Shown here: in pieces, positions 9,791-33,813 of the stretch | How the letters are laid out: each line of letters opens with the position of its first letter | Numbering within the stretch: the first letter of the stretch is position 1 | Source of the DNA: Octopus sinensis | Taxonomy: Eukaryota | DNA length: 49,095 nt | Reading direction: 5' to 3' | NCBI RefSeq assembly: GCF_006345805.1 | Contig: NW_021834361.1 | Coordinates: 1-49,095, forward strand | Notes under the pieces: generated by a model | The model's input: the letters and a program-made list of their open reading frames with translations, nothing else | Told to the model about the DNA's origin: nothing | Database searches by the model: none | Program-made: the position numbers and the translations under genes

Positions 9791-10701
9791 CTACTTCCGA
9801 ATGCTCACATTATTTAATAAATAGTCGATAGTCCTCATGGAATTGGGGGTGATGTAGTGGAGAGATATCAAATGCCGACTCACACCATTGCGCTCCTGCA
9901 TTAGTAAAATAAAGCAGACGAACTGGGTGTTTGTCCAACTCTCGAAATTGTTTATACCAATCCGGTGTATTTTTTGAAAACGTGTCGATCAGATTAAATG
10001 AAGAAAACCGAGGCAACTGGGATTCGTCGGATTTAATGTCAATTTCAAGACGATTTAAACAACGACCCATTTCCACGTCTTCCATGCCTGTCTTGGCGCT
10101 GCATTCCTTCACCTGGGAGTATATTTAAGCCACTACCTCTGCCTTATTGGCAGAAATCACTTTCTTTACAGCCTCTCTACTCAAAATATAGGAGGCTCCC
10201 CCACTGAAATATCCATTGGGGAAATATTTGTAGAATTTGAGTCCAAATGAAACAGGGCGACTGTGATCTTCAGAAACGAGGAATTGGCGAAGATTGTTCA
10301 CAATAATATATGTATCGTCGTCTGCTTTGACAATCCAGTCATATTCGTCGTGAAATTTGGCTTCGATATATTTCAGTCCGCCGTATGTTTTTGAAGGGAG
10401 ATGTTCGTAGTCATCGTTGATATTCAGCGAGGTTATGAAGGACTCGTTCGCTATGACTTTTCCGACAAAATAAAATGTCTTGTCACATCTTTTGCCCCAC
10501 GTATCCAAGACTGCACGTCCTCGGGTTTTATAATTGTTTTTTGATGTTAAAATCATACAAAATATGACATGTCGATGACTGTCAGTTCTTCCGAGGACGA
10601 CAATATTCTGAAAATAAAGAATGATTCCTAAGAGGATGACAGATGCGATAATCAGCAATCTATATATTTATGAATAAGCAGTGCCTTTTATACAAAAACA
10701 T
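9791..10701 (-). CDS. C1GALT1: Core 1 beta-1,3-galactosyltransferase-like (GT31)
   Basis: N-terminal TM, IFCMILT, DTWGKRCD, DWIVKADDDTY, YFSGGASYILSREA, EDVEMGRCL and ISLHYITP after joining two mini-introns. Start at 10701 is inferred through a short first intron. Confidence 0.85.
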
Positions 10702-11019: not shown

Positions 11020-12430
11020 GGTACATATGTAGTAGTTGGCGGCCACTTTTTAGCGAATTTTAAAAAAACTATATTTTTTTAGTTAAAAAAATATATAATT
11101 AAAAATAATACAATATAAAAATAATAAAATCCCACGCTACTTTAATTTAATGAGAAGTGAGGTCAATCTATTCAATCTACCCACAAATATGTCAGAATAA
11201 TCCGGTTTGTCTACCTGTGGGCAAAAAATATATCTTCTATGGAGATATGCATGGAAAATCTTGGTTGGGCTTCACATACAACCGTGGACTGGTCAATGTA
11301 CATGCGTGAAATTTGCATGCTATCATTGACATCTCGTCAGAGATCCAAAATAGGTGTGCGTAAATTTATAATATAATAGGCGGTGAAGGAATGATTGTGG
11401 AAATTGACGAAAGTCATTTTTCAAAAAGGAAATACAACAGAGGCAGAATGTTGCCTGAGCAATGGGTTTTCGGCGGAATCTGCAGAGAAACGAACCAATG
11501 CTTCTTAGAAGCAATACCTGACAGAACAATGAAGACCCTTACGAAGGCTATTCTTGAGAATGTAGAAGAAGGCACCATTCTCATATCAGACTGCTGGAAG
11601 GGTTATTCAACAAAAGATCTTCAGGATGCAGGATATCAGCACCTGCAAGTGAATCACAGATATTGTTTTGTTGATCCAACTACGGGTGCACACACCCAAC
11701 ATATTGAAAGGTTTCCAATTATATAATTATTCCTTAGAATGTGGAGTAGCGCCAAATGGCGTAATAGAAAACAAAGGGGAACAGTCAGACAACACCTTAA
11801 TAGTTATTTTACGGAGTTCATTTGGCGACAGACAGCCAAAAAGAAAGAATTTGAAACAATCATGGAGTGCATTGCCTTACATTGTCCCCCAGAATCAAAA
11901 CTAAAAGAAAAAAAATAATTAATAATTTTGTATAAAAATAATTAATTTTTTTGGTACTTGTAGATTTCATGCTGCACGAAATAAGGCTCTAACTTAATTT
12001 TGGAAAATTTTTTTGATTAAAAATATGATATTTTAAAAGAAATTACAATGCCGAATTTATAAATATTATTATAAATTTTTTAAAAAAAATTTTAAATTTG
12101 TAAGTGCGTTGCGGGTGTTTGGGGGAATCTGTCGAGGAAGTAATGAGTGTTTCCTGGAGATGGTTCCAGATCGCACGAAAAGAACTTTGACAGCCGCGAT
12201 ACAGCGAAATATCGCACCGGGTTCAGTGATATACTCTGACAAATGGAAGGGTAATTGTAATTACTTTATTCTTGTTAATAGGTTATTCAACGCCAGATCT
12301 TAATGCTCTTGCATATGTGCCATTACATTTTTTATAGTAATATTATTTAAAAAAGGTAATTATTCACCAAAAAAAATATAGTTTTTTTAAAATTCGCTAA
12401 AAAGTGGCCGCCAACTACTACATATGTACC
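11020..12430 (+). mobile_element. Merlin (IS1595-related) DNA transposon, non-autonomous/composite
   Basis: ~60-bp perfect TIRs GGTACATATGTAGTAGTTGGCGG..; flanking 7-bp direct repeat ATATTTG (11013-11019, 12431-12437). Transposase motifs KIGG..VEIDES.F.KRKYNRGR, WVFGG, SDCWKGY, HTQHIERMW, EFIWR; second fragment at ~12105-12330. Confidence 0.93.
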
Positions 12431-12680
12431 ATATTTGAAAAATAAAAATTGGCACAAAACAATCCCAGGGGTCGGAAAATAAAGCACAATAGCCAACTAT
12501 TTACGCAGAATAGACGCGTCAATAATGTACGCACTAATAATTAAAAAGTTCAATATATAAATTAATCTCAATTTATAAAAGAACGTCAAAACATTTATTA
12601 AACAATATTTTATATTATTTTTAAAATTGAATAAAAGATTAAAATAATATTTAAAAATATTAATAAACAAGGAGGTTGTC

Positions 12681-14473
<1,793 letters not shown>

Positions 14474-14567
14474 TCCAATATTTAAATAATATTTATTTTT
14501 ATCTGTAACTTTTCTTTTTATATCGGTTAATTCTTTACGTTACTTTTATATGAGTGTTCCTGGGAAT

Positions 14568-14654
14568 TATTGAAATCTCGGAGATTTCTAGTTATAAAAC
14601 TGATTGTTTAATAAACAAATAAGGCCACGATTAAAGTAGGATAGAAATCCCGTC
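14568..14654. repeat. Dispersed direct repeat, copy 1 (copy 2 at 20092-20166)
   Basis: TATTGAAATCTC.GAGATTTCT..GATTGTTTAA..AAATAAGG.CACGATTAAA.TAGGATAGAAATCCCGTC is shared by both; copy 2 lacks 12 nt. Confidence 0.85.
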
Positions 14655-16513
14655 ACATTTGACTTTACCAAATCTATAAAATTATTATAATAAGTGAGCA
14701 TACTCTGTCTGAGTGGCCAATGTGTAGTCTCTGGGAAGGATTCAAAATACTCTGCATTGACTGTATTCACAAGCACTTTGACCTACAAATCACCACTCTA
14801 ATCGACTTTATTCAAATAAGCCACTCGTCTCTGAAGAATTGACACAAATGAGAAATATGGATGGTCAATCAAAACCACTGTGGATGGAACGTGCGTTGTC
14901 TTTGTGGAGTATTTATACAACAGTGACTGTGTTATGACGGTGATGGTACAATTCCCGTTCACATCGATAAGGTAAAGTAGACAGACAAATGTACAAAGTC
15001 GACCGAGTTAGTCCTGGGGCGAATTTGACTGCCTTTTTAAGGATCTCAGTGCATCTCGACTGGAATATCGTGGCCGTTTCCTAACGTGAACAAATATGTC
15101 TACTTTTTGATCTGCATGGTGTTTTTCAAATCGAGGACACACGTGTCTACGATAGCACTGTGTGAGTCCAAATATCTCCCGACCTGTCAAATTTTATCAA
15201 CAACGGTCACGGAATTAGTCAACGTGTGGAATATATCCAACATTATTGTCAAAACATGTCTACTCCACAAAACCAGGGGAATTCTACCAATTTGAGTCCA
15301 TTCTACAAACTTGTTGACTAACTCTGACAGATGCGAGTCCGCTAACACACAAATTATCTTTCCCTCGAGTTGAATTTGACAAGGAGAAAAGTTCAGCGTC
15401 CTTTTCCCCCCACCAAATTCCCCACCAAACAGAACAGAACCAGCAGATTGAGACAATTATTGAAGAGTATGCAGGAGAGTGTCTTTATTAGTCGGTGTAA
15501 ACCTGTACATCACGATAAAACGAGTTTCACCCAGTTTGTCGCGTATAAAGTGCTTGTCTTCCACGTATGTATTGTCGGACTGCCCAACTCAGGTCCGCAC
15601 AACTTAGAGTCCTACACATCCAAGGACGGACTACCGCAAGTTTTCCAACAAAAAAATCCCCATTAAATAAGCACATGAAGACAAGTCGAGTCACGGAAGT
15701 GTCTGAATTATCGAGAATTTTAATCAATCTTCGGAAGAAGACAACACTGGTAAGTGACAGGCCACCACTCGAATGGCCGCATGGTGTTCCCCGGTCCAAT
15801 CATTTCCTACAAACTTCATCATTTAAATAAACCAATTCGTGTCGAATAAAGACCCAAAACTGCAATGATAATCCAAAAGTCACAAAAAAGGAAATAAAAG
15901 AGGGGTGATCGAGAATGTGAATCCGAGCTATGATCTGCCAAAAAACCCACACATGTGACCTTAGAGGACGAGAGAATTTATTTTGTGAGTCAGTATACTC
16001 CTCTGATACTTCTGCATTCGAGAACTTATCAGCGATGACCCTGATTTGACAATAATCTGTAAAAGTCTCACGAGAATGTCATTTTAAAGTTGACCACCAA
16101 TTATATTTCCCGCCAAAACATTTAAAGTTTCCAAAATAACATCAAATCTTAATAATAAAATGGTATGGTGTGTGTCTGTCTGTCTGTCTGTCTGTGTGTG
16201 CACACCAACTTCAAATTGGCAATACGATGTCCTCGACTTACATGATGAGGTCCTTAAAACCTTCCCCCCAAAAAAATTAAAAAAAAATTTTCTGCATTTT
16301 GGTTAAAATGAACAACTACGATCTCCTCGACTTACATGATGAGGTCCTTAAAACCTTCCCCCTAAAAAAAAAATTAAAAAAAAATTTCTCTGCATTTTGG
16401 TTAAAATGAACAACGCAAATGTCCTCGACATTCATGATGAGGTCCATTAAACTTCCAGGCAAAAATCTCACGTATTAAGAATATCCTTGATAAAAACGAC
16501 AGCGAGAATATTA

Positions 16514-17364
16514 TGTCACATGGGCGACTATGTCGCTATGGGCAGCCAGTCCTTTTACGTGTTTCTATGGAAACCGCAGAAAAGGTATTAAATATTGAAT
16601 ATAGCAATTTATATATGGAAGAGTGTAGATTAATCAATTATTCTAATTTAAAATTACATTTGAATTATCTTTTAAAAATGGCTTACCCAAAAGTATATTA
16701 ATTTTAACAGCGTGGTTACTCATACTTTGTGATGTCTGGGTTTAAGGGTTACGTCAGAAATATTAACGAATACAATCAAATTAAGGAAGCGTTAATCGGG
16801 ATATTCCCGGAGGATATGAATGCTCGAAGCAAACACCGGTTGGCCAAAAAGGCTTCCAATTTTTGTCAAAAATGTCTGAAGAATCGTCAGCAGAAACATC
16901 ATTTAATTTCGAGTTAGGGTTACGTTAGGGTTTGGGTTAGGGTTAGATTTTGAATATTTATGTTGTCACTTGCCAACGTTAGGGTTTGGGTTAGGGTTAG
17001 ATTTTGAATATATTTATGTTGTCACTTGCCAACGTTAGGGTTTGGGTTAAGGTTAGAGTTAAAGTTGTTACAAACTTTGCAAAAAATTTGATGTAAATTA
17101 TAATTTGCTAATGTTGCAATTTATATTATCAAAAATAAAAATAATTCACATTATAATTTGCTAATGTTGTAAATAATTTTACTATTTTAAAGCAAGCATG
17201 GTTCAAATATAAAACATCATTTTCTCAAAAATTTAAAGTTCAATCATTAGTTCGTATCGTTTGCCTTTATATTAGTTGGCCTTTTAGTAAATATTTTCTA
17301 TGTAGTTGCCATGGAAACACGTAAAGGCCAGGTTGCCCATAGGGGTCTTATCACCCATGTGACA
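16514..17364 (+). mobile_element. Ginger/TDD-like non-autonomous TIR element
   Basis: TGTCACA...TGTGACA ends with ~60-bp imperfect TIRs. TATTA duplicated (16509-16513, 17365-17369); empty site present in Helitron copy 2 (~25230). Internal ORF 16729-16917 resembles the GIN/Ginger N-terminus (GIFP..RSKHRLAKKASNF). Confidence 0.75.
16914..17060 (+). repeat. TTAGGG/TTTGGG telomere-like repeats in a ~55-bp tandem unit (2 full units plus a partial)
   Basis: GTTAGGGTTTGGGTTAGGGTTAGATTTTGAATAT..GTTGTCACTTGCCAAC repeated. Confidence 0.85.
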
Positions 17365-18959
17365 TATTAACAATGATGAACTCCCAATTATTCGCGATAA
17401 AGAAATTCAATTCATCCTATGTTTTTCTCTTTAAAATTAAATGCATATATCATTATCGACCATGAATCAAAATTAAAGCTAATATCATATTTGACTTTTA
17501 CAGAATGTGCAATCACAGATTGCACGACTTTGAATAGAGTGTGCAATTAACAGATTTTGAAAAACCACTTTGATAGTTGAAACCACATTAGCACAATCAT
17601 TAACACAATTTACCACCAATTGACGCACGACCTTGAATAGAGTGTGCAATTAACAGATTTTTAAAAACACTTTGATAGTTGAAACCACATTAGCACAATC
17701 ATTAACACAATTTACCACCAATTGACAGCGCAATCTGAAGAATTTGCGTAAAAATATTCACTATTTAGTTAAGTTTTTCGTAAAGATAGAATTTATTTTC
17801 GGTATGTCTCTTTTCCTAAACTTTGTTATTATTCAAAAATATTTTTTCATAGATAACCGAAGGAGGAAGACGACCTTAAGAAAATAGTTTTTCATAAGAT
17901 AGATTTATTTTCTGTATGCCTCTTTTTTCCTATATTTTTTATTATTCAAAAATAATTTTTAAATAGATAACCGAAGGAAGAAAAACGAAGCTGAAGAAAA
18001 AACGGGCACCTTAAGGTATTAATTAAATCTTTTTGTGTGTCGCTTTTTTGCTGCTGCTACTCTGCCTGCCCCATTTCCGCCAGTGGTTTTATTACGAAAT
18101 CTTGCGCCACCTAAATTATGCACGGAACGAGGTTAGTTATCAAAAATATAATGGCTAACGTAATAGAGGCGACGATATTAACAGGTAGTATGAGTGAGGA
18201 TGTTTATATTCCACGAATTCCGATAATTTCTGATGAATTACCATTTAGATTTAAAAGGCTGCAATTTCCTTTGAGGATGAGTTTTGCAATGACAATAAAC
18301 AAGGCCCAGTGACACTCATTAAAGGTAGTTGGTTATTTTTAGAGAATGAGTGCTTTTCACATGGACAGCTGTATGTGGGATGCTCGAGGGTAGGCAGAAG
18401 AGAAAATTTATTCATATATGCCAAGGAAGGACGGACGACAAACATCGTTTATCAACAGGCGATAGAATAGGGTTACATTTAACCAGGTAGTTTTATACAT
18501 CTACATAAACTTATAGTTGTTTGATGAAACAGGCCCTCCGCAGGAGCTAGGTCGCGGTGAGCGAAGCGAGCTGCCGAGCTAGTCTTCAATAAAATAAGCA
18601 CAAAAACCTATCATTGTCGACTTTTACAGATCCGGACGATTTCCTGGTAAATTCTGCCGTATGGTGGGACATAAAGTTTATTGCGGAGTCATATATACTC
18701 GTCTACAATACAAAACGAGGACAACACAGCCAGAGGTGACCAAATGCAATTGTCCGGTCAAGGAGGAGATTTAAATTAAAGTTGTGAGTCAAAATGTGGA
18801 AGACTGAGCTCACTATTTTGGGGATATTCGAGTGGAAATGGCAATTTCCGAACAAATGTGAATTGCATTGATAGCTTTCCTCGAATTTGCACTCTCTTCA
18901 CCAAAACATTTCAAAAATTCAAATAATGAGGATATCTCGTGAAGAAAAGCCACTAGAGG

Positions 18960-20056
18960 GGCCAATTTGGAAAGACATTTTAATTCCAAACATGGTGCAT
19001 TTTCGAAAAATTACCCCTCTGGTAAGGCTGTTGAGGAACTTAAAAGAAATGTTGGATGTTTAACGTCAACGTTTAAAAATTTAAGACAGTTATCAAAGAC
19101 TTCTACAATTGCTAGGTTTAAGAAAAAACCGGAGAGTATATAAAAACGTGTATTATTAAACCAGGTGAAGAAATCTTCCAAGAATTTGGAAACAACAAAG
19201 ACATCTTCAATTGTTTCAATAATATACCACTGTCTGGGTTTTCTCTAAGAAAAATTTCTGAGAATTTTTACCTCTTAAAGGCTTTTTACCTTTTAAAGGC
19301 TACACTTATTAAACAAATAAAAGCCACTTGAGCATCAACTCTTTAAGGATTTGCTAATTAAAACTGATTCAAAGCATATTGATCTTCTTCAATAGAAGAT
19401 GGCTTTCCAGGTGGGATATTCTTAATCGATTCACACCCCTTATTGAAGAGATTCAATATTTTCTTGGCATCAAAGGAATGGAATATTCTGAATTGACGAA
19501 CAAGTTATGGTTACAGAAGCTACATTTTATGTGAAAAATTCAATCAATTAAATTTAAAATTACAAGGAACTGGAAATATCGCATTATTTATGTTGGAGGA
19601 AATTGTCTTATTAAAAAAAACTATGCTTGTTTGTAGATGATGCAGATAATGGGATTTTATCTCATTTCCCTAAATTACATAAATATTCGATGGAGATTAA
19701 AACGATTGAGTTTATTTTATATTAAAGAAACTCTTTTATCAAACAGGTCAGAATTAAATTAAAAAATACAGCAGATTCCATGATTTTAGAAAAAAAATCT
19801 ACCTTATTGTTCGTTACTTCTCCTCTGACTACGAAAACAGAAGATCTAAATTTTGCACCATTTTGAATAAAATATTTCTGAATTCAAGATGCAATTACTG
19901 GAATTAAAGTGTAAAGAACTATAGACTTAAAAGTTTATCCACCTAACTACCGAATTAGAAGCTTAGTAAGCAAAAATATGGTGGATATTTAATTATGTCT
20001 AAATGCTGTTTAAGTAAAAAAGTGGCTCTTAGCCACAAAAATGTTGCCGACCCCTG
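18960..20056 (+). mobile_element. Degenerate hAT transposon (Charlie/Buster, GTF2IRD2-like) with right TIR
   Basis: ANLERHFNSKH BED-finger remnant, decayed RWLSR/NLKLQG segments, 3' end ..ATGTTGCCGACCCCTG. Left end missing. Confidence 0.7.
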
Positions 20057-20091
20057 CCCATGGACTATCTTACTTGTTTATTGCTGAGAAG

Positions 20092-20166
20092 TATTGAAAT
20101 CTCTGAGATTTCTGATTGTTTAACAAAAAAATAAGGTCACGATTAAAATAGGATAGAAATCCCGTC
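20092..20166. repeat. Dispersed direct repeat, copy 2 (copy 1 at 14568-14654)
   Basis: See copy 1. Confidence 0.85.
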
Positions 20167-20415
20167 CAAATAGCCTCTACCGGGAATATACGACATCCCC
20201 GCTGACGTAGAAACACACAAGTCCACACAAATACCGCAAATAATAGGAAAAAATGTTTCGACAAAACAAACCAATGTAAAACGGCCTCCTATTTTCCTAA
20301 TATGGAATAATTATAAAAACATTCCATAACTGGAAACGTGCAATTGTCTAATTAACAGACTCTCCGCCTTTTAATGACTTTATAATAACAAATAAAAAAC
20401 TCAAATAATATAAAT

Positions 20416-21850
20416 TTATTCAACTGCACTGGTTCGGACATTTTTGCCAAGAACTTTCATACAACGAGCATAACCTCCGCCCGCCCCACTTCTACTGTCC
20501 TCTAACACTACTGGCATCAAACCACGAGAAAAATTCTCAACAGGCGGGAGAGAATTCTCACGTGATATAAGAAGTGTAGAACCCAGTTCCACCAACGTAG
20601 TGGCCATCGAAGGAGTGAAAGTACAAATTCTAATAATAATAATAATCAGAACAACTAACTCAGACTCGACAGGCAACTCATCCTCAACGACAGCCTCCAC
20701 TGCCCTCTTCTCCCTATCAATATTCAGCCAAAACATACATTTCCTCACACTTTGTTTCTGAGTTGATCTGAGAAGGAATCCGTGCCAAATAATCAGCCAA
20801 ATACAGGCAGTAATTCTCCCTCGACCAATCGAGAGAATATGGAGGACACCCATAGAAGAGACACCTCTACAGTCGTCAATAAGCAGTACATCAATCGAGT
20901 TGGGCAGAGGAGGGGTATTAAATCCATGGTAGCTGATAACACGGTCAATCTGAATATTATTCCCCCATTTCTTCAACAAATCCTTCTCCCACCCCGGAGG
21001 ATACCCAAATACCCTCATTCGGTAAATATGCACTGCCAACTCCCCACGAGCAAGTCCGAGGGCCACCCGCAGGTCATCACTGCATAAATCAGCCAATCTA
21101 ATACGAAATGCAGCCCGGTCTATGCCCACTAAATCGAGAGGACTCATCCACATGAATGTCGCACAAAAACCGTCTAAAAAGTAATAAAAATGATAAATTA
21201 TACCTTTTATTGAAGGTCTTCTTTCCTTCCGAGTGGATTGGAGTAGTCTTGGCACTGCTGTCCACTCTCAGGAAGTATCGTGGAGGGGATGTCGAGGACC
21301 TAAACAAATATCCAACAAAATTTACTTTCTTTTACTATTTGAGACTGTAAAAGATTTACTGTAGTGGACAGAATATGGCTTTCGGTGTTTTTTAGAGGAT
21401 TTGTGTCTCTTTTTGGGGGAGATCAATTCGTCCAAAATTCTCTCTCTGCAATCCGAGTCGGAATTGGACTAAATATGGCCAATGGATGAAATACGGAGGA
21501 CTTGTCTTTTTTGGAAAATAATTTGTCGAAAAAATTATCAATTTTATATTTATATTTTCTTAAAATAAATAATAATTAATTTACTTTGAATCTTTATTAT
21601 CGAAATATATAACCACCACGCCGTCTTCAGGTGGGAGACTACAAATTATAAGTTTAGTCACCTCTCCTCATGTCCGCAGTAAATTAAATTCTTATAAAAC
21701 GTGTCTAAAATGATCTTTTTAACAATAAACTTTCTTCGTGTATTTTTTTAGTGATTTTTAACAATTCCTTTTCGAAAGGTCATTCCACGAATTGATATTA
21801 TCAGTTTTGTCGTTTGAAAAGTGGAGAAAGTCGGGCAAAGAATTGTCCAT
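20416..21850 (-). CDS. ZCCHC8: ZCCHC8-like NEXT complex scaffold with PSP domain
   Basis: PSP motif RPGCISDDLRVALG..HIYRMRVFGYPPGW..ISYHGFN; upstream GVVVIYFDNKDSKKYKYKIDNF; several mini-introns. Start at 21850 inferred. Confidence 0.8.
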
Positions 21851-22420: not shown

Positions 22421-22437
22421 AGGGGTATTTCTGGAAT

Positions 22438-23559
22438 TTTTTTTTTTGTCAAAAAGTTAAATGTAATTAACAAATAGTTATTAACTAACTAAATTCCCGG
22501 CATCGTAAATGGAAACACAGTTTCCACGTACTATGGCCAAGGAAATCCTTTCGAAAAGCCACTTGGACTCGCGTGGGTCTCCCCGTTTATGGGAGATCAT
22601 GCGGCCAAGCTTTTTTAGAAAGGAAAGAGACTTTTCGCCGATGACGCCGGAAGTCTCGACGGCGATGGGAGTGAACAGATACCGTTCAGAGAGCTCCTTG
22701 TATTTTCCAATCTTCATCTTCTCGGTTTTGCGAGAGACTGAGCCAGGCTCGACAGCTGAAGAAGGAAGGTTGAGCTCCGAGAAAGTGTCTGAACACGTCG
22801 CATCCCATAACAGAGACTTGCCGAACTCAAACGGGAAAGTCGATAGGCCGTCGGGTCTTTTTCCGTCTCCCCTCGCAAGCCCGACGGGTTCGAGGATTGA
22901 TGGAATCCCAGCGGCCGTGAGCCCCCTCTGAATAACGTCGTTAAGTGCTGCATGGCGTGGTGCGCGCCCTGCACTGCGACGACAGAAAGGGGATGTAGAC
23001 CAAAACGGTCAATGACAGCACCACAACGACATTTGTGTATTTCGCAGATTTCCAATCCAAGACGCAATGATAAACCAATTCGTAGGCAATCTTTGTCTAG
23101 TAAGTTACCGGTGGAAGGGACAGGGAGAGCATCCAGCCAGGCCCCACTCCTGTGCAGCAGCCTGCGCGGAGACATGCAAGTCTGTGCTGATCGAAATTTT
23201 TGCGTAGATGTACGTCAAGAGCTTCACAAGAAATGGCATCCCATTGAGCTTGGATACACGGGTCACTGGGTCTTTTGTTGTACAATGAATCCCACAGGTC
23301 CAAAGCGGCCACGTGATCAACTGACATTTTTCGTTCGGGTAGGTTTCTGAGAACAATGTCAGTGAGGACACGGGATGATGCCGTTGACGAAAGGAAAGCA
23401 GGAAGAGCGATAGACACGGGAGAACGGAGTCCAATCCCACCGCGGCTTACAGGCAGGGTGGATTGAATCCAACCAGAGGGTCGAAACGTACGTTGCATAG
23501 CGACTCTGCTCCGGACTTCAGAATATTTTCAATAACGGAAAGGAGATTTTGTTCGTGAA
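22438..23559 (-). mobile_element. 5'-truncated CRE-clade (RLE) non-LTR retrotransposon
   Basis: TLPVSRGGIGL, zinc knuckle CRCG..GLHPLSC, RPDG, WDATC, PIAVETSG, RISLAIVRGN; A11 tail; 11-bp TSD ATTTCTGGAAT (22427-22437, 23560-23570); frameshifts. Confidence 0.88.
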
Positions 23560-23603: not shown

Positions 23604-26242
23604 TCTTAATAATAAAATGGTATGGTGTGTGTCTGTCTGTCTGTCTGTGTGTCTGTCTGTGTGTCTGTCTGTCTGTGTCTGTGTGTGCACACCAACTTCA
23701 AATTGGCAATACGATGTCCTCGACTTACATGATGAGGTCCTTAAAACCTTCCCCCCAAAAAAATAAAAAAAAAATTTTCTGCATTTTGGTTAAAATGAAC
23801 AACTACAATGTCCTCGACTTACATATGAAGTCCTTAAAACCTTCCTCATAAAACCTTAAACCTTCCCCCCAAAAAAAATTAAAAAAAAATTTTCTGCATT
23901 TTGGTTAAAATGAACAACTACAATGTCCTCGACTTACATGATGAAGTCCTTAAAACCTTCCCCCCCAAAAAATTAAAAAAAAATTTTTCTGCATTTTGGT
24001 TAAAATGAACAACTACAATGTCCTCGACTTACATGATGAAGTCCTTAAAACCTTCCCCCCCAAAAAAATTAAAAAAAAATTTTCTGCATTTTGGTTAAAA
24101 TGAACAACTACAATGTCCTCGACTTACATGATGAAGTCCTTAAAACCTTCCCCCCCAAAAAAAATTAAAAAAAAATTTTCTGCATTTTGGTTAAAATGAA
24201 CAACTACAATGTCCTCGACTTACATGATGAAGTCCTTAAAACCTTCCCCCCCAAAAAAATTAAAAAAAATTTTCTGCATTTTGGTTAAAATGAACAACTA
24301 CAATGTCCTCGACTTACATGATGAAGTCCTTAAAACCTTCCCCCCAAAAAAAAAAAAAAAATTTTCTGCATTTTGGTTAAAATGAACAACTACAATGTCC
24401 TCGACTTACATGATGAAGTCCTTAAAACCTTCCCCCCCAAAAAATTAAAAAAAAATTTTCTGCATTTTTTTAAAATGAACAACTACAATGTCCTCGACTT
24501 ACATGATGAAGTCCTTAAAACCTTCCCCCCCAAAAAAATAAAAAAAAATTTTCTGCATTTTGGTTAAAATGAACAACTACAATGTCCTCGACTTACATGA
24601 TGAAGTCCTTAAAACCTTCCCCCCAAAAAAATAAAAAAAAATTTTCTGCATTTTGGTTAAAATGAACAACTACAATGTCCTCGACTTACATGATGAAGTC
24701 CTTAAAACCTTCCCCCCAAAAAAATTAAAAAAAAATTTTCTGCATTTTGGTTAAAAAAAACAACTACAATGTCCTCGACTTACATGATGAAGTCCTTAAA
24801 ACCTTCCCCCCCAAAAAATTAAAAAAAAATTTTCTGCATTTTGGTTAAAATGAACAACTACAATGTCCTCGACTTACATGATGAAGTCCTTAAAACCTTC
24901 CCCCCCAAAAAAATTAAAAAAAAATTTTCTGCATTTTGGTTAAAATGAACAACTACAATGTCCTCGACTTACATGATGAAGTCCTTAAAACCTTCCCTCC
25001 AAAAAAAATTAAAAAAAAATTTTCTGCATTTTGGTTAAAATGAACAACTACAATGTCCTCGACTTACATGATGAAGTCCTTAAAACCTTCCCCCCAAAAA
25101 ATCAAAAAATTTTCTGCATTTTGATTAAAATGAACAACGCGAATGTCCTCGACATTCATGATGAGGTCCATTAAAACCTTCAAGGCAAAAATCTCACGTA
25201 TTAAGAATATCCTTGATGAAAACGACAGCGAGAATATTAACAATGATGAACTCCCAATTATTCGCGATAAAGAAATTCAATTCATCCTATGTTTTTCTCT
25301 TTTAAAATTTTGCATATATCATTATCGACCATGAATCAAAATTAAAGCTATTATCATATTTGACTTTGACAGAATGTGCAATCACAGATTGCACGACTTT
25401 GAATAGAGTGTGCAATTAACAGATTTTGAAAAACCACTTTGATAGTTGAAACCACATTAGCACAATCATTAACACAATTTACCACCAATTGACGCACGAC
25501 CTTGAATAGAGTGTGCAATTAACAGATTTTGAAAAACACTTTGATAGTTGAAACCACATTAGCACAACCATTAACACAATTTACCACCAATTGACAGCGC
25601 AATCAGAAGAATTTGCGTAAAAATATTAACTATTTACTTGAGTTTTCGTAAAGATAGAATTTATTTTCGGTATGCCTCTTTTCCTAAACTTTTTTATTAT
25701 TCAAAAATAATTTTAAATAGATAACCGAAGGAGGAAAAACGAAGCTGAAGAAAAAACGGTCAGCTTAATAAGGTAATTAATTAAATCTTTTTTGTGTGTC
25801 GCTTTCTTGCCTGCCGCATCTCCCCCTGCCCCATTTCCGCCAGTAAAAAACAAAAAAATAAAAAAAGAAAAAAAGGAAATTACAAAGGAAAAATGAAAAA
25901 ATTAAATATAAAAAAAATAGACCACAAAAAATGAAAAAAAAAGTTTGCAATGACAATAAACAGGCCCAGGGACAGTCATTAAAGGTAGTTGGGTTATTTT
26001 TAGAGAGTGAGTGCTTTTCACATGGACAGCTGTATGTGGGATGCTCGAGGGTAGGCAGAAGAGAAAATTTATTCATATATGCCAAGGAAGGACGGACGAC
26101 AAAACTCGTTATCAACAGGCGATAGAATAGGGTTACATTAAACCAGGTAGTTTTATACATCTACATAAACTTATAGTTGTTTGATGAAACAGGCCCTCCG
26201 CAGGAGCTAGGTCGCGGTGAGCGAAGCGAGCTGCCGAGCTAG
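23604..26242 (+). mobile_element. Non-autonomous Helitron, copy 2, with expanded internal minisatellite
   Basis: Same A|TC..CTAG|T ends, hairpin and helicase remnant (GQSLKVVG..FSHGQLYVGCSRVG) as copy 1. Confidence 0.93.
23705..25175 (+). repeat. ~94-bp tandem minisatellite: 16 unit heads versus 3 in Helitron copy 1
   Basis: Unit AATGTCCTCGACTTACATGATGAAGTCCTTAAAACCTT(C)n(A)nTT(A)nTTTTCTGCATTTTGGTTAAAATGAACAACTAC; variation is mainly in homopolymer length. Confidence 0.97.
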
Positions 26243-26680
26243 TCTTATTATAATTTAGATGAAAATAACGAGGCATCGTTTGTCGAAGATGAACTTAATG
26301 GTAAATTTACGATGTATTTATTTTTAGAAACGAATAATAAAAGATTGTGGGACGAATCCGTCATTGAAGCTACACAGATTTGAATCCCCATATGAAGAAA
26401 AGGGAAAAGTAAAAAATATAATGTCTAAATAAGATTCATGGTTAGTTGTCTTTCCTAACAAACATTTAGTTCGAATTACGAAATAGTTACTATGAATAGA
26501 GATAAAAATGTTAAGTTTTTTGATTTTTTAGCAATTATCTTTAGTCAAGTAATTAGGTCAAACTATGTAGGTCGCCCTGTCAATCTTGTCAACAATGAAG
26601 GTCGCTCTGGTCGCCAGCGTGGGATGGTCGCCAGCGTGGGTCGCGACATAATATATTTATTTAAATATAATTTTTTAATA

Positions 26681-28641
26681 GAATAGAATAGAATAGTGTT
26701 TATTGAGCGAAAAGAAAAAGAAAAACAAGGAAGAAAAACATCGGCGGGGAGATAAAAACAAGGCACCGAAGTGTCTCTTTCCATGCGTATCCCCAATACT
26801 AGTCATGTTTGACGACAATTCTCCAAGACCATCCGGATCGTGGGCACAGAGGATTCTTGTGAGTCTTTTAGCCTTCCGTCAAGTTGTACTCCGTAAGCCA
26901 ATTTCATAGCGAAACGTCTTGTCTTTTCCAACTGTTCGATCAGGTAGTCACTCTCCTCCGTACCGTACCAGCCCTCGTAGCCATATGTGAGGACTGGCTG
27001 CACACACGTTTTGTATACGTAGATGTACGTTTCCGGATCCAGATGGAACCTGGTTAAGCTTTTGAGGATCCTCACACTCCTCTTTCTCTGATTTGCTATA
27101 TGCTCTACGTACGAGCCACGACAGTTGATGGTTGCTCCCAGGTAAGAAAGATTTTTGCTTTTCGGGAGATCCATCACATAGCTACTCATCGCATATGCAC
27201 ACGACTCCGCATAGCGACTCCCTCTCCGCAACCATGAAATGGTGCTCTTCTCCGGTGCTAGGGTCAAACCCTTCTCTATAGTCCACATCTTTAGCGTTGC
27301 AATGTATGATTTCAGTCGTCTCCAAGACTGCGATATCCTTTTCGAGGTATCCATAACCAGGATATCGTCAGCATAGATAACGAGCTTGCCAGTACGTGTC
27401 GACGGCAGAGGAATGTCCGCCAAGAAGAGGTTGAACAGAAGTGGACTCAAGATAGATCCCTGCGGGACTCCCCTTCTAAGTTCCACACACCCCGATAGGC
27501 GGTTTCCACAGCGGACAAATGATTGTCTTCCTGACAAGAAGCTCTCCAGCCATCGATAGGTCTTTATCCCGGCTCCGATGTCATGGATTCTGGAGAGTAG
27601 GCCCAGGTGCCACACGCTATCGAAGGCTTTGGCCAGATCCAGACACACCACAGTTAGCCATGCTTCATTGCTGTCAGCACGGGATAATTGGTGCTCTAAC
27701 TCCCTGAGGCAGTCCCCTGTGGATCTTCCTCCACGAAATCCCCATTGTTCAGGTAAAAGCAAATTTTGTGATTCTATATGACCAGAGAGTCTGTTAAAGA
27801 CAATCTTTTCCATTGTCTTAGAGAAAGCACAAATGAGGCTAATTGGCCGGTAGTTCTGTGCCAGCAGTGTCGATTTACCAGATTTTGGAATCATTCGAAC
27901 AATCGTATGCTTCCACGCCGATGGAAGGTGTCCGAACGTCCAGCTGGCGTGAAACAACATAGTCAATGCTCGTATCAAGATTTCAGGGGCCTTCTTTAAC
28001 AACTTCGGAGGGATGTAGTCGAAGCCAGGCGCCTTGTTCTTCAACCCAGCAATTGCCCTTTCAACCTCTTCCTGTGTTATCGCCCCACATAATGGTCCCT
28101 CCGATAATTGCGAAGAGCCAAGCTTCTTCACAATTCGGTCATAAGTCCCTCGTGGAACGGTAGATTCGACCTCTTGAACCTGATTAAGTTGGTTCCTGAG
28201 TACTCTCCGGGATACGATCAGAGGAAATATATTTCCCGTCTGGTTCTTTTAGTGAAATTTCAAATCCTTTGGCATCATTTCTGGTAAGGCGTTGATATGT
28301 TTTCCAGAAATTAGGGTTTCGCTTATCCAGTTTTCTGCATTCAGACCTCCATTTACTTTCGACCTCAGTCTTGGCCATTTTTGCAATAGTAGATTTTATC
28401 TTGTCGATCTCCAATTTTAGGCGGCATTTGATTGACTCAACCCGACATCTTCTCCTGCGATTTTCCAGGTACCTTTCGTTCTGATCAGAGTGACAAGTTT
28501 CGAATTCATCCGCTTTTGCGTTCCTTTGGGTTTCCATACATTTTTTAATGCATAAACATCCAGGAATTTTATGATTGACGATCTAAGGTGATCATCGAGA
28601 TTGTCAATATCATCTCTGCTTCTCAGAGGCTGGGACACGAC
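26681..28641 (-). mobile_element. 5'-truncated non-LTR retrotransposon (I/Jockey group)
   Basis: RT motifs KAPGFD, YRPISL, QWGFR, LDLAKAFDSVWH, GVPQGSILSPLLF, YADD; AATAAA then (CTATT)n tail; 12-bp TSD AATTTTTTAATA (26669-26680, 28642-28653). Confidence 0.9.
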
Positions 28642-28702: not shown

Positions 28703-28967
28703 TCCGAGAAGATGAAGATTGGAAAGTACAAGGAGCTCTCTGAACGGTATCTGTTCACTCCCATCGCCGTCGAGACTTCCGGCGTCATCGGCGAAAAGTC
28801 TCTTTCCTTTCTAAAAAAGCTTGGCCGCATGATCTCCCATAAACGGGGAGACCCACGCGAGTCCAAGTGGCTTTTCGAAAGGATTTCCTTGGCCATAGTA
28901 CGTGGAAACTGTGTTTCCATTTACGATGCCGGGAATTTAGTTAGTTAATAACTATTTGTTAATTACA

Positions 28968-29003
<36 letters not shown>
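28703..29003 (+). mobile_element. Very recent 3'-end CRE insertion with 35-nt poly(A)
   Basis: Almost identical to the 3' end of 22438-23559; poly(A) 28971-29005; 13-bp TSD AATAATTAGTCTT (28690-28702, 29004-29016). Confidence 0.93.
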
Positions 29004-29021: not shown

Positions 29022-29769
29022 ATGGGTTTTCACGTATTGACACCGCCGATATATTTGTGCTCAATAATTTCCTTCTTTGTGGGTAAGACATTTATATTTT
29101 AGTTTATTAAGGAACTGCCCTTCTCCTCAATCAGAGTGGAGTCCGTTTCGACCTTGGATGGTGGTCCTGTCTGCCATATTTGTAGGTTCCTCACTTCAGT
29201 GACTCCAGCAATGTGGGCCACTACTGGAGTGGGTCTCACCATCGGACTCTCAGTCATTGGAGCTGCCTGGTTAGTCCGCCTGCCTTATCCAAGGGGCATT
29301 TTCCTGACGGCTTCCAGCATAATGAGTGCCGGAGTCCGCGAACCTCGAATTCGGACGCGGAATTTGATAAGCATTGTCTTCTCGGAGGCTGTGGCCATTT
29401 ACGGAATTGCGGTTTCGATGGTGATGATCAACACCTACACTGTGCCTGCCTTGTGACTATTCCAGCGATTTGATTTGAGTACAGCCAGTGACTACGTGCT
29501 GAGGGTGAACTACTACGGGGGATATGCCTTCATGGGGGCTGGACTGCTTGTCGGATTTGCGAATTTGTTTAGTGGGATATGTGTGGGCATTATTGGGTCG
29601 TCCATTGCTCTATCTGACGCACAGAATCCGTCAGCTTTCTTGAAGTTGATAATTATGGAAATATTTGCCACTGCTTTGGGCATTTTTGGAGTCATTTCTG
29701 GGATTCTGATGGTTTTGTTTGTCCGACTGATTGTAGATATCCCGTGTCAAGTTTGGCAATATAGTCTAA
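29022..29769 (+). CDS. ATP6V0B: V-type ATPase 21-kDa proteolipid subunit c''
   Basis: [65 protein letters not shown]; four introns of 25-29 nt. Confidence 0.95.
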
Positions 29770-30621
29770 TCGAGCTAATTTTACTTACTTTCTATGTTTA
29801 TTTATTAAATTTTGTTAACAGTGTGTGTTTTATAACAAATGGGAATTTTCTGACCGATCGACTTTTTGATGATTACAGTATTTATAAATTAGTCGAATTA
29901 TACAAAATTGAATTGACAAAATGATAATTTGTCACATGTATATTTCATTCCGAATACAAAAGTCTTGTAGGGAAGTAATCTAGTGTATAAATTCAGGCAA
30001 ATTTATTTAAAATAGTGCTGTTGAGACCTGCCTATAGCCTTTTCACGAGAGCAATAGTACTTTATAGCTCCGGATAGGCAGGAGGCACACTTTATTATAC
30101 GTAAAATTAGTTAAGGTTTGTTGATCGTAGGACAAATGAAATAATTTTATTTTTTTGTTTCTTTTTCTTGCGTGTCACTTCTTAAACCCTTATAGAACCT
30201 CTCATCGGATGAGCAGCAGCCAGAATCATTTTGAAAATCACTATTACATATACGAAAATAATCTTTAAATAAAATTATATAAAATTTCCAAGGAAGATAC
30301 TCTTCTCTAGCTGGCATTTATTTGTATTGACAAATTGTACTTTAGCGTTATTCAAAATAGCATATGAAGTAGCAAATCAAACAAGCCTCTTAATAAGTTG
30401 TGTGATTAAAAACAGTTCTGGACGCGTCACAAAACATAAATAATTGTAGCCGTGATAGAAATAATTGGTTGGTAATGGTAAAAATTAGTTTCGAACATTC
30501 AAATATGAATTCATCTAATTTAATTTCAAATAATTAACTTTAGTTTAATAATCTCGATAAATATACTATTGTAAAAAACACACCTCGATTTATTGCTGTG
30601 TGCTATTTAATTTAGTTAAAA

Positions 30622-31970: not shown

Positions 31971-32336
31971 CGGGTGGGAGACATGTCTGTTCTAAGTCCA
32001 TTAACAGCACAATGATCAGAGGTGAAAAAATCTTCCTACAGTATATCTCTATTGATTTCAACTTCTCCCAGTGTTCTGTTGTCCAAATTTATACTGATTT
32101 TCCATTTGGTAGTAAGTTCCTGAATAAACATTACCATTCAACACGGGAGGCCAGAGTTTTGCAGGGTCTGGATTAAGAATTCGTGGTCGACTGAGTCAGA
32201 TGCTTTGTTCACATCAATCCACATACAAGATAACTTATTCCCATTTTGCTGGTTGATGCACTGATTTACGATTGCATGTTCCTTCACTCCCCGACACATT
32301 CTTCGTGTTCCAAGTTGATTGTCGCTAACGAGGCTA

Positions 32337-33811
32337 CAGTCCCGTCCAAATGTTAGAGGCACCCTATTTTTTCCCTAAAAAAGGCACTTATTTGTCATTT
32401 TTTGAAAAATGTTTTTTGTTAATAACAAACTATTGAATAAAAAATCTTAACCTAAAATTTTTGAGCACATTTAGTTTATAATGTGTATTTACTAAGAAAC
32501 TCAAAATAATACATCGTTCATATGTTAGAAGCACATTTCAATAACGAAAGACAAAATTATCCAAAAATTTAATATTTAGTCATTCCTCCATTATTTATGA
32601 CTACCGAAGATATTCTTCTTGGAATTGACTCAAAAAGCTTAATAACCACACCTGTATCAATGTTTTCCCAGGCCTTCTTTGTTTCATTCCATAATTCTTG
32701 AATCGTTGATGCTCCACATTTTTTAACTTCTTTTTTTAAAATTGCCCATAGATTTTCAATTATATTTAAGTCAGGAAATTGACTTGGCCATTTTTACATG
32801 AGTTTTATGTTGTTTTCGGCCATAAACGCTCTAGTGGATTTTGATGTATGACATGTTGCTCCATCTTGTTGAAGAAAATAATTTTCTTCATAAAAATTTT
32901 CAAATCCTTCTTTTATAACGCGTTGATATTCGGCGGAGTCGACTGTTTTTCGGCAAAGGACAATTGATCTTTGCCCATTGCTTTTAATTGCTCCCCATAT
33001 CGTAATTGATAAAGGAATTTCACAGTTTCAATTGAATATTCTTTCTGTAATTTTGATCCAGGGGGTCTTCTTATGTATTGCCTAGACATCTGATTTAACT
33101 GAATCCGACATTCATCAGAAATATCACTAAATTCCAGTCGTCTTGATTCCACGGAATTTTAGTAAGACACCATGTATATCTTTTATCAACCTGAGATGCA
33201 GTCAATTTTGGTTTTTTCACTGCAATGCGTCCGAATAATTGTTGCGTCTCAAAATTCGTTTAATTGTCGAAAGACTCACTTTTCCGGAAAAGTTACAGCA
33301 TATAAGAAGATCGTTGGCGGTCATTTTTGGTGTAATTTTGACATTCTGATAAGATAGCGTTCATCATTTTTGGTTAATTTTTTGTTCCTTCCCTTTTTTG
33401 GCATATCGTTATATAAATATCCGTGTAAAAATCGCTTTTTAATTTTTTGAATGGCCAACGAGAGATTCCCAAATCTTTGGATATTTTCACCTGAGATTCG
33501 CCACATTTTAATTTTTCGATGACGAGAAACCTGTTATAAGCTGATACACTAGGCATTTGAATTTTTTATTAGAATTAATAATAATAAATTATAGAATTAT
33601 TGCTTTTTACATAAGTGCCTCTAACTTACGAGCAACCAATTATTTTTTGTTTTCAAGTTTGAGAATACTATCGGTCGAATATTTATAAAAACTTTGGAAA
33701 TGTTTAATTTCTTTTAAAAACTTAATTTATTCTTTAAAATCTTTCGAAAAATAATAAATAAGTGCCTTTTTAGGGAAAAAATAGGGTGCCTCTAACATTT
33801 GGACGGGACTG
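32337..33811 (-). mobile_element. Tc1 transposon with IR/DR-type ends; frameshifted transposase (33556 to 32569)
   Basis: ~56-bp TIRs CAGTCCCGTCCAAATGTTAGAGGCACCC.., TA on both sides; DGATCH, WPSQFPDLNIIENLW motifs; inner repeats at ~32522 and ~33614. Confidence 0.93.
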
Positions 33812-33813
33812 TA

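What the first reader, a model, noticed from the sequence alone, without database searches (positions are those of the whole stretch)
16146..18607. Helitron inserted one base into an exon rebuilds the splice acceptor and could be spliced out as a 2.46-kb intron
Seen: the empty site on the minus strand is ..GAT AG|GT(24-nt intron, 18607-18584)AAG|A TTT GAT GTT (R-F-D-V). The Helitron sits after the first exon base. Its 5' end read antisense is CATTTTATTATTAAG|A, recreating AAG|A TTT GAT exactly. Splicing 18607 to 16148 would restore the same codons. Inference: in antisense orientation the element end acts as a portable 3' splice site. Caveats: this PI4KA copy has other lesions, and a spliceosome tuned to ~25-nt introns may not span 2.4 kb or may still use the original AG.
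Basis: partly seen in the sequence, partly recalled or inferred. Interest (0 to 1): 0.75.

Follow-up and report, generated by a model that had tools for sequence, protein, structure and literature searches.

The report
Helitron inserted beside a mini-intron acceptor
A 2.4-kb rolling-circle transposon (Helitron) has landed one base past a 24-base intron in a truncated PI4KA-like gene fragment, in what looks like a dicyemid parasite contig inside an octopus assembly. The "rebuilt" splice site is a by-product of the transposon's end sequence and target choice, and nothing shows that the element is spliced out.

Summary
The sequence-level observation holds. A non-autonomous Helitron occupies 16147-18582 (+ orientation; 5'-TCTT..., ...CTAG-3', host A|T). 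It lies antisense to a PI4KA-like reading frame, one base after a 24-nt GT-AG mini-intron (18607-18584). Its far end reads ...TTATTAAG|A, so joining 18608 to 16147 would restore the empty-site codons.

- The original acceptor is intact and still 24 nt from the donor. The element duplicates AAGA rather than rebuilding it. Use of the near AG gives ...VDNDR-LARQLASLTAT-stop.
- AAGA follows from the TCTT 5' end plus an A|TCTT target. The second copy in the window (23604-26242) has the same TCTT flank at a non-genic site. A third copy on a sister contig has TTGG instead.
- The host "gene" covers only about residues 280-1080 of PI4KA. It has no kinase domain anywhere on the 49-kb contig, and stops sit in the homology-supported frames.
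- Transposons that carry a 3' splice site (introners, some Helitron-derived) are already described.

The window is contig VCDQ01013100.1 of the Octopus sinensis assembly. Its 21-24-nt introns and 36.7% GC point to a dicyemid parasite. Overall this is an ordinary insertion with a neat coincidence, and interest is low.

The parts
16147..18582 (+). Non-autonomous Helitron, copy 1 (2436 nt), antisense to the PI4KA-like frame.
   Evidence: 5'-TC(TT), 3'-CTAG, host A|T, no terminal inverted repeat (7/40 matches). Boundaries shared with copy 2 and the L005 copy.
16147..16163 (+). 5' terminus TCTTAATAATAAAATGG. Its reverse complement ends ...TTATTAAGA, which gives the distal AAG|A (AG at 16149-16148, A at 16147).
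   Evidence: Identical in copies 1 and 2.
16227..16451 (+). 94-98-nt satellite inside the Helitron: 2.3 units here, about 14-16 units in copy 2.
16514..17363 (.). Nested ~850-bp insertion that is absent from copy 2. It has imperfect 66-nt inverted ends and telomere-like 56-nt repeats at 16922-17057.
18083..18470 (+). Frameshifted remnant of the C-terminus of a Helitron (PIF1-like) helicase.
   Evidence: 623 proteins at E<=1e-5, best 3.4e-47 at 66% identity. Hits carry PF21530 and are named PIF1 helicase. A direct Pfam scan of the remnant gave nothing.
18545..18582 (+). 3' end: a G+C-rich imperfect palindrome (AGCT..TCGC GGTGA GCGA..AGCT), then GCCGAGCTAG.
   Evidence: The fold is no better than shuffles (z=0.38).
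18584..18607 (-). 24-nt GT-AG mini-intron GTTTTTGTGCTTATTTTATTGAAG, with an in-frame TGA. It is intact.
   Evidence: Same length as the V-ATPase c'' introns.
18583..18583 (-). First exon base (A), cut off from the rest of its exon by the insertion.
18608..19920 (-). Upstream part of the PI4KA-like fragment, roughly human residues 280-705. Homology is weak here and no long stop-free path exists above about 18900.
14994..16146 (-). Downstream part of the PI4KA-like fragment, human residues about 706-1080. Homology ends here and no kinase domain follows.
16084..16086 (-). In-frame TAA inside the best alignment next to the junction (...AGNIIGGQL*NDILVRLLQIIVKSG against human 709-741).
   Evidence: By inspection of the sequence, the only GT-AG pairs spanning it are 28, 31, 38 or 41 nt long, none of which keeps the frame; one search's stop-free path uses the 28-nt one.
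23604..26242 (+). Helitron copy 2, at a non-genic site next to retroelement debris. Its flanks are also A|TCTT.

Best explanation
This is an ordinary insertion of a recently active, non-autonomous Helitron into a truncated, probably defunct PI4KA-like gene fragment.

Shown: the element entered at a host A|T that is the first and second base of an exon, directly after a 24-nt mini-intron. The family begins 5'-TCTT and this target read A|TCTT, so the antisense strand now carries AAGA twice: once at the untouched original acceptor and once at the far end of the element.

Inferred: if the locus is transcribed, the spliceosome still removes the 24-nt intron at the near AG. The message then runs into antisense Helitron sequence and stops after 11 codons.

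Inferred: the likeness between the element's antisense end and the intron's 3' end reflects the transposase preferring A+T-rich targets that resemble the element's own 5' end. It is not an adaptation for splicing.
For: - Helitron anatomy and three copies.
- Intact proximal intron, and read-through product ...VDNDR-LARQLASLTAT*.
- No GT within about 50 nt upstream of the distal AG.
- Copies 1 and 2 both have a TCTT 3' flank. Only 1.9% of A|T sites in 142 kb of this genome do, so P(>=2 of 3) is about 1.1e-3. The copy 1 flank is within 3 edits of the element's first 15 nt (0.27% of A|T sites) and copy 2 within 4 edits (2.7%).
- Helraiser also prefers A+T-rich targets, most strongly on the 3' side of the element (PMC4778049).
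- The PI4KA-like chain covers only residues 279-1080. No kinase-domain match exists anywhere on the contig, and a copine gene on the other strand occupies the next 2 kb.
- Homology-guided frames contain stops. They hit PI4K_N at E=0.0024, while the stop-free path hits nothing.
- In dicyemids and myxobolids the 3' splice signal is reduced to AG (PMC13644364), so an AG at an element end is nothing special.
Against: - No RNA data were available, so the choice of acceptor is inferred.
- A stop-free path through 20-30-nt GT-AG introns spans 18897-14589 once the Helitron is removed. Its score is 438, against 155+-62 for shuffles and 77-347 for other regions. The fragment may therefore have been open until recently.
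- Introns above 100 bp do exist in such genomes, and the mean D. japonicum intron of 38 bp is well above the 21-24-nt introns seen here. A long intron is therefore not impossible.
- The target-preference argument rests on three copies, one of which (TTGG flank) does not fit.
Confidence: 0.75

Rival explanations
1. The antisense 5' end of the Helitron serves as a 3' splice site. The donor at 18607 is joined to the AG at 16149-16148, and the whole element plus the old mini-intron is removed as a 2460-nt intron. The reading frame is restored, as with an introner.
For: - The join restores the empty-site codons exactly.
- The last ~15 nt before the distal AG (CATTTTATTATTAAG) resemble the intron's own 3' end (TTATTTTATTGAAG).
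- Introners that carry a 3' splice site and borrow the 5' site exist (PMC9860276), and about 1% of classified introner families are Helitron-derived (PMC12130899).
- Longer introns occur in mini-intron animals.
Against: - The proximal AG is intact, 24 nt from the donor, and is the first AG after any branch point of the old intron.
- There is one locus only, in a truncated fragment with stops in its homologous frames.
- The AAGA identity is also seen at a non-genic copy.
- The antisense element holds 96 other AG dinucleotides.
- No expression evidence exists.
Confidence: 0.06
2. There is no intron or exon here in any working sense. The flanks are a dead, untranscribed relic, and the 24-nt GT-AG is a chance pair or a fossil. 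The position 'one base into an exon' then has no consequence.
For: - The upstream 'exon' has no homology of its own.
- By the base frequencies of this contig, roughly half of AG dinucleotides should have a GT 20-30 nt upstream; the copy 2 site shows a 26-nt GT...AAG|A as well.
- No homologue was found in 5.8 or 1.84 billion proteins.
- No open path exists upstream of about 18900.
Against: - The length is exactly 24 nt, as in the V-ATPase c'' introns of the same contig, one of them confirmed by an exact 8-residue gap.
- Removing it keeps the upstream open frame in phase with the PI4KA-like downstream exon and removes a stop.
- The spacing of the collinear chain is nearly 1:1 with human PI4KA.
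Confidence: 0.17
3. The boundaries are wrong. TCTT is a 4-bp target-site duplication or part of the 3' end, so the element is not a canonical Helitron and the empty site lacks the AAGA acceptor.
For: Copies 1 and 2 both have TCTT at the start of the element and immediately after CTAG.
Against: - The third copy ends ...GAGCTAG|TTGGCCC, so TCTT is neither part of the 3' end nor a constant flank. No TSD test was possible for that copy, because its 5' end is missing.
- With shifted boundaries, the empty site would lose the only AG that keeps the PI4KA-like exon in frame.
- There are no terminal inverted repeats, and a Helitron helicase remnant lies inside.
Confidence: 0.02

Closest known systems
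Canonical (Helitron1-type) non-autonomous Helitrons, e.g. Helibat/Helraiser (PMC4778049)
   Same: 5'-TC and CTAG-3' ends, insertion between host A and T, no TSD and no TIR. A G+C-rich palindrome lies ~11 nt before the 3' end. The 3' flank is A+T-rich. An internal remnant of the PIF1-like helicase is present.
   Different: The palindrome is short and imperfect, and no more stable than shuffles. No Rep domain is left. The element carries a 94-98-nt satellite of variable copy number and a (GTCT)n tract. Two of three targets resemble the element's own 5' end (A|TCTT...). I did not find that reported for Helraiser in the passages read.
Introners: transposons that create introns, some carrying the 3' splice site and borrowing the 5' site (PMC9860276). 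About 1% of classified families are Helitron-derived (PMC12130899).
   Same: On paper, one splice site would come from the element and the other from the host, and removal would leave the mRNA unchanged.
   Different: Introners are defined by many spliced copies in expressed genes. Here there is one copy in a truncated fragment, no transcript evidence, an intact competing acceptor 24 nt from the donor, and no donor brought or created by the element. It would enlarge an existing intron, not create a new one.
HelibatN3, a Helitron carrying a captured splice donor that makes chimeric transcripts (PMC4778049)
   Same: A Helitron-borne splice signal affecting host transcripts.
   Different: In HelibatN3 the signal is a captured host promoter plus donor, shown to work experimentally. 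Here it is only an AG in the terminal TCT read antisense, and it is untested.
Ultra-short spliceosomal introns of Dicyema japonicum and myxobolid myxozoans (PMC13644364, PMC6736024)
   Same: GT-AG introns of 21-24 nt, with splice signals reduced to GT and AG. The contig's GC (36.67%) and repeat load match D. japonicum (36.7% GC, 49% repeats), and the host species also matches.
   Different: Species identity was not tested against a dicyemid sequence. The record is labelled Octopus sinensis.

Membership tests
Helitron (canonical) | 5'-TC and 3'-CTRR termini | tested here: met
   TCTTAAT... and ...GAGCTAG in copies 1 and 2. The 3' end is also the same in the L005 copy.
Helitron (canonical) | Insertion between host A and T, without target-site duplication | tested here: met
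   Flanks are A|...|T in copies 1 and 2, and |T in copy 3. TCTT recurs after two copies but not the third, so it is not part of the element's 3' end or a constant flank. A stricter TSD test on copy 3 was not possible, because its 5' end is missing.
Helitron (canonical) | No terminal inverted repeats | tested here: met
   7 of 40 positions match between the 5' end and the reverse complement of the 3' end.
Helitron (canonical) | Subterminal 3' hairpin about 10-12 nt from the end | tested here: inconclusive
   An imperfect 4+4-bp palindrome is present. Minimum free energy is -9.1 kcal/mol, z=0.38 against shuffles.
Helitron (canonical) | RepHel protein or a remnant of it | tested here: met
   A helicase C-terminal remnant lies in the element's orientation. 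Best hit E=3.4e-47, and hits carry PF21530. No Rep part remains, and a direct Pfam scan was negative.
Introner | The element is removed from mRNA as an intron | not testable with these tools
   No transcript data. The prediction from sequence is use of the proximal AG and a stop after 11 codons.
Introner | Many near-identical copies acting as introns in different expressed genes | tested here: not met
   Three copies were found in about 142 kb. One is in the PI4KA-like fragment, one is non-genic and one is 5'-truncated. The sample is very small.
Introner | The element supplies or recruits both splice sites so that excision is exact | tested here: inconclusive
   The distal AG plus the pre-existing donor would be exact. 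However, the donor belongs to an older intron whose own acceptor is intact.
Dicyemid/myxobolid-type mini-intron | GT-AG, about 20-30 nt, lying between homologous coding segments in phase | tested here: met
   24 nt, GT-AG, with an internal stop. It is in phase with a PI4KA-like downstream exon. The upstream exon rests only on an open frame and collinearity.
Dicyemid/myxobolid-type mini-intron | Spliced in vivo | not testable with these tools
   No RNA data.
PI4KA (phosphatidylinositol 4-kinase III alpha) | N-terminal solenoid region (Pfam PI4K_N) | tested here: inconclusive
   PI4K_N at E=0.0024-0.0073, below the curated cut-off. Human PI4KA is the top PDB hit at E=0.005, with three collinear stretches. 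The chain statistic was reached by 0 of 150 shuffles.
PI4KA (phosphatidylinositol 4-kinase III alpha) | C-terminal PI3/PI4-kinase catalytic domain | tested here: not met
   tblastn of PI4KA against the whole contig gives no collinear or significant match past residue 1080, only chance-level hits with E>2. No Pfam hit on either strand around the locus.

The most novel reading that the evidence does not exclude
This Helitron family preferentially enters sites that resemble its own 5' end (A|TCTT + A/T-rich). Read antisense, that sequence is a T-rich tract ending AAG|A, which is what the 3' ends of this animal's mini-introns look like. Antisense copies would then land at intron-exon borders more often than chance. 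Each would carry a look-alike acceptor that lets at least some transcripts skip the element. Mini-introns could become kilobase introns this way, giving a Helitron route to intron expansion in a genome otherwise locked at about 24 nt.
Probability: 0.04. Interest if true: 0.6.

Novelty: new member of a known kind. Interest (0 to 1): 0.2.

Why it matters
If the element were spliced, it would show how an animal whose introns are about 24 nt tolerates transposons in genes, and it would add a Helitron case to the introner picture.

As things stand, the value is practical:
- It documents a young Helitron family, with a variable internal satellite, in what appears to be a dicyemid.
- It gives a small but non-random hint that the family's targets mimic its own 5' end.
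- It flags that the Octopus sinensis assembly holds parasite contigs of 49-668 kb, labelled and annotated as octopus. This matters for anyone using that assembly or its proteins.

Tried and rejected
- **Pfam on all six frames, 14400-21400 with the Helitron removed.** Only a PSP domain (ZCCHC8-like ORF, 20419-21267) was found. PI4KA is invisible at this level.
- **Word-indexed search of 5.8 billion proteins with 306 aa of PI4KA-like exons.** Nothing found.
- **Full HMMER search of 1.84 billion proteins.** The single hit, P0121, is a 6565-aa bacterial repeat protein matched in 23 weak stretches. I rejected it as spurious.
- **Exact scan of metagenome contigs for the Helitron 3' end.** No match.
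- **ORF-maximising mini-intron search.** It threads long stop-free paths through wrong frames and gave an unrecognisable product for the copine gene. I used it only as a control statistic, not as a gene model. Its stop-free PI4KA path has no Pfam hit.
- **3' hairpin fold.** No better than shuffles.
- **TCTT as a TSD or part of the element.** Rejected on the third copy.
- **The 100-nt repeat at 14557-14654 / 20081-20166 as borders of a duplicated segment carrying the PI4KA fragment.** It is only about 80% identical over about 100 nt, and I did not pursue it.
- **More Helitron copies in the same genome.** Only four sister loci could be fetched, which yielded one more copy.
- **Rfam and tRNA scans.** Nothing found.
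- **Supplements of the two genome papers.** No repeat-class or intron tables are held.
- **Caveat.** The PDB alignments reproduce its residues and numbering at 771-825, 988-1022 and 1055-1081.
Full report
**What is in the sequence**

On the + strand the element starts at 16147 (...ACATCAAA|TCTTAATAATAAAATGGTATGG...) and ends at 18582 (...GCGAAGCGAGCTGCCGAGCTAG|TCTTCAATAAAA...). A second copy in the same orientation lies at 23604-26242. It has identical termini and is 96-97% identical over the shared parts. A third, 5'-truncated copy lies on a sister contig and ends ...GAGCTAG|TTGGCCC.

The element has these features:
- The ends are 5'-TC and CTAG-3', and the flanks are A and T.
- There is no terminal inverted repeat (7 of 40 matches).
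- The region 18083-18470 is a frameshifted remnant of the C-terminus of a PIF1-like helicase, in the element's orientation. It matches 623 proteins at E<=1e-5, the best at 3.4e-47 and 66% identity.
- The expected 3' hairpin is only a short imperfect palindrome, no more stable than shuffles.

I therefore file it as a non-autonomous canonical Helitron, with the hairpin criterion left open. Copy 1 differs from copy 2 in two ways. It has 2.3 rather than about 14-16 units of a 94-98-nt internal satellite. It also carries a nested ~850-bp insertion at 16514-17363.

**The insertion site**

On the minus strand the sequence reads ...GAC AAT GAT AG|GTTTTTGTGCTTATTTTATTGAAG|A. The antisense Helitron follows, ending ...CATTTTATTATTAAG|A, and then TTT GAT GTT ATT TTG.... 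The 24-nt GT-AG stretch (18607-18584) contains an in-frame TGA. Removing it keeps the upstream open frame in phase with the downstream one.

Introns of this size are real on this contig. The V-ATPase c'' gene (29022-29923) aligns to solved homologues at E=2.7e-45, with an exact 8-residue gap where a 24-nt GT-AG segment lies (29270-29293). A second 24-nt GT-AG segment with an in-frame stop lies at 29442-29465, in the gapped part of the same alignment. A third, at 29079-29102, is predicted from the reading frame only. The galactosyltransferase gene has a predicted 21-nt one at 10133-10113.

The insertion did not destroy the acceptor, so the element does not rebuild it. It places a second copy of AAGA 2.4 kb further on.

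**Is the host sequence PI4KA?**

No single test is strong:
- Pfam on raw frames sees nothing.
- A word-indexed search of 5.8 billion proteins and a full HMMER search of 1.84 billion find no true relative.
- Human PI4KA is the top hit among solved structures, at E=0.005 with three collinear stretches.
- Pfam PI4K_N scores E=0.002-0.007, below its cut-off.

The collinear evidence is strong. Nine weak tblastn matches run in order from human residue 279 to 1080 across 19920-14994 (Helitron removed), at almost one codon per residue. The chain score is 186, against 65+-14 (maximum 120) for 150 shuffled queries. The match nearest the junction (ILETLNVLAGNIIGGQL*NDILVRLLQIIVKSG against human 709-741) starts three codons after the insertion point, and 1 of 500 shuffles reaches it. 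The exon upstream of the intron has no homology of its own.

**State of the host gene**

The homology stops at about residue 1080 of 2102. No kinase-domain match exists anywhere on the 49-kb contig. A copine gene on the other strand (Pfam Copine E=1.8e-46) fills the next 2 kb. The fragment therefore cannot encode a kinase.

The frames that carry the homology contain stops. One is a TAA at 16086-16084, inside the best alignment. By inspection of the sequence, the only GT-AG pairs spanning it are 28, 31, 38 or 41 nt long, none of which keeps the frame; one search's stop-free path uses the 28-nt one.

A stop-free path through 20-30-nt GT-AG segments can be threaded from 18897 to 14589. It scores well above controls (438 against 155+-62 for shuffles). 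However, it leaves the homologous frames and has no Pfam hit, whereas the homology-guided reading does. Upstream of about 18900 no open path exists. I conclude that it is a truncated fragment that is probably decaying. I cannot exclude that the middle part was open until recently.

**Why the antisense end looks like the acceptor**

Any canonical Helitron read antisense ends ...GA followed by the host T, and this family ends ...AAGA. The acceptor-plus-first-base is duplicated whenever the + strand flank after the element begins TCT.

- The flank is TCTT for both copies in the window, and copy 2 is at a non-genic site next to retroelement debris.
- Only 1.9% of the 26,498 A|T sites in 142 kb of this genome are followed by CTT. 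Two of three copies gives P of about 1.1e-3.
- The copy 1 flank (TCTTCAATAAAAT) is within three edits of the element's first 15 nt (TCTTAATAATAAAAT). Only 0.27% of A|T sites are that close. Copy 2 is within four edits (2.7%). Copy 3 is unremarkable.

The simplest reading, which is an inference, is that the transposase favours A+T-rich targets resembling the 5' junction it cleaves. Helraiser likewise prefers A+T-rich DNA, most strongly on the 3' side of the element (PMC4778049). The resemblance between CATTTTATTATTAAG|A and TTATTTTATTGAAG|A then follows from target choice, not from selection for splicing.

**What splicing would do**

All of this section is inference.
- The donor, the 24-nt spacing, everything upstream of the near AG and the first exon base are unchanged.
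- In dicyemids and myxobolids the 3' signal is reduced to AG, with a few A residues upstream, and the 5' signal to GTa (PMC13644364). The near AG keeps every feature it had.
- Using the near AG gives ...VDNDR LARQLASLTAT-stop.
- The far AG has no GT within about 50 nt upstream, because the (GACA)n tract lies there. It can only pair with the distant donor, across 96 other AG dinucleotides.
- Introns above 100 bp do occur in such genomes. Use of the far AG is therefore not impossible, but nothing favours it.

**Comparison with what is known**

Transposons that provide one splice site and borrow the other are the defining feature of introners, including families that carry the 3' site (PMC9860276). 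About 1% of classified introner families derive from Helitrons (PMC12130899). A Helitron carrying a working, captured splice donor is also documented (HelibatN3). What would be new is expansion of an existing mini-intron in an animal with 24-nt introns. Membership in that class fails on the criterion I could test (many spliced copies in genes) and cannot be tested on the decisive one (splicing).

**Origin of the window**

One ORF of the window (33975-35894, a reverse transcriptase) is an annotated NCBI protein. Its only contig is 49,095 bp long: VCDQ01013100.1 of GCA_006345805.1. Related proteins on sister contigs of that assembly are named [Octopus sinensis]. Those contigs share 94-100% identical repeats with the window.

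Several facts point to a dicyemid parasite rather than the octopus:
- The introns here are 21-24 nt.
- Among the 51 animal genomes compared in PMC13644364, introns under 30 bp were found only in myxobolids and Dicyema japonicum.
- D. japonicum lives in octopus renal sacs and was collected from O. sinensis. Its genome is 36.7% GC and 49% repeats.
- The window is 36.67% GC and repeat-rich.

I infer that this is a dicyemid contig inside the host assembly. I did not test it against dicyemid sequence.

**Verdict**

This is an ordinary Helitron insertion with a coincidence that has a simple cause. Interest is low, and the side observations (parasite contigs in the octopus assembly, targets that look like the element's own end) are the more useful products.

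Noticed in passing
window 1-49095 (whole contig); L002-L005: The window is the entire contig VCDQ01013100.1 of GCA_006345805.1, labelled Octopus sinensis. Its genes have 21-24-nt introns, and its GC (36.67%) and repeat load match Dicyema japonicum, a kidney parasite collected from that octopus. Sister contigs of 58-668 kb share 94-100% identical repeats. Parasite contigs therefore appear to sit in the host assembly and to be annotated as octopus.
   Followed up: partly
window 18583-18601, 26243-26261; L005:379-397: Two of three Helitron copies are followed by TCTT, the element's own first four bases. Their 3' flanks lie within 3-4 edits of its first 15 nt (0.27% and 2.7% of A|T sites do as well). 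The third flank (TTGGCCC) does not fit. This hints at a preference for targets that resemble the element's own 5' end.
   Followed up: partly
window 16514-17363; L005:3632-4090; L003:2829-3057: An ~850-bp element is nested in Helitron copy 1. It has imperfect 66-nt inverted ends (16509-16574 / 17305-17369) and 56-nt repeats containing TTAGGG/TTTGGG-like runs (16922-17057). The same element sits at a different place and in the opposite orientation in the L005 Helitron copy, so it is mobile in its own right.
   Followed up: partly
window 16227-16451 and 23739-25181: A 94-98-nt satellite lies inside the Helitron: 2.3 units in copy 1 and about 14-16 units in copy 2. It is preceded by a (GTCT)n tract. 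This looks like satellite DNA carried and spread by a Helitron.
   Followed up: no
window 29022-29923 (+): A V-ATPase proteolipid c'' gene (E=2.7e-45 to solved structures) with three introns of exactly 24 nt: 29079-29102, 29270-29293 and 29442-29465. The middle one matches an exact 8-residue gap in that alignment. The NCBI annotation calls no gene here.
   Followed up: yes
window 12648-14510 (+), 9813-10667 (-), 20419-21267 (-): Other host genes: a copine (Pfam Copine E=1.8e-46, plus C2), a core-1 galactosyltransferase/Fringe-like gene with a 21-nt intron at 10133-10113, and a ZCCHC8-like ORF with a PSP domain (E=1.8e-10). The copine 3' end abuts the point where PI4KA homology stops.
   Followed up: partly
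window 22437-22725 and 28704-28992: A 289-nt inverted repeat (96.5-99% identical) brackets a 6-kb segment. That segment holds Helitron copy 2 and a reverse-transcriptase ORF (26803-27960). The arms are pieces of a retroelement that also occurs on L003.
   Followed up: no
window 14557-14654 and 20081-20166: A ~100-nt direct repeat (80% identical) lies on either side of the PI4KA-like fragment. It could be two unrelated MITE-like insertions or the edges of a duplicated segment.
   Followed up: no
window 32335-33813; 45564-46643; 47693-48221; 11364-11723: Further transposons:
- a 1.48-kb element with perfect 47-nt terminal inverted repeats and mariner/Tc1-like ORF pieces (family judged by eye);
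- pogo/Tigger-like DDE_1 and HTH_Tnp_Tc5 ORFs at 45564-46643, 99.5% identical to L004;
- a second pogo-like ORF at 47693-48221 (judged by eye);
- an ISXO2-like transposase fragment.
   Followed up: partly
window 16147-18582: Helitron copy 1 is exactly 2436 nt (812 codons), so read-through would stay in frame. In practice the antisense strand hits a stop after 11 codons.
   Followed up: yes
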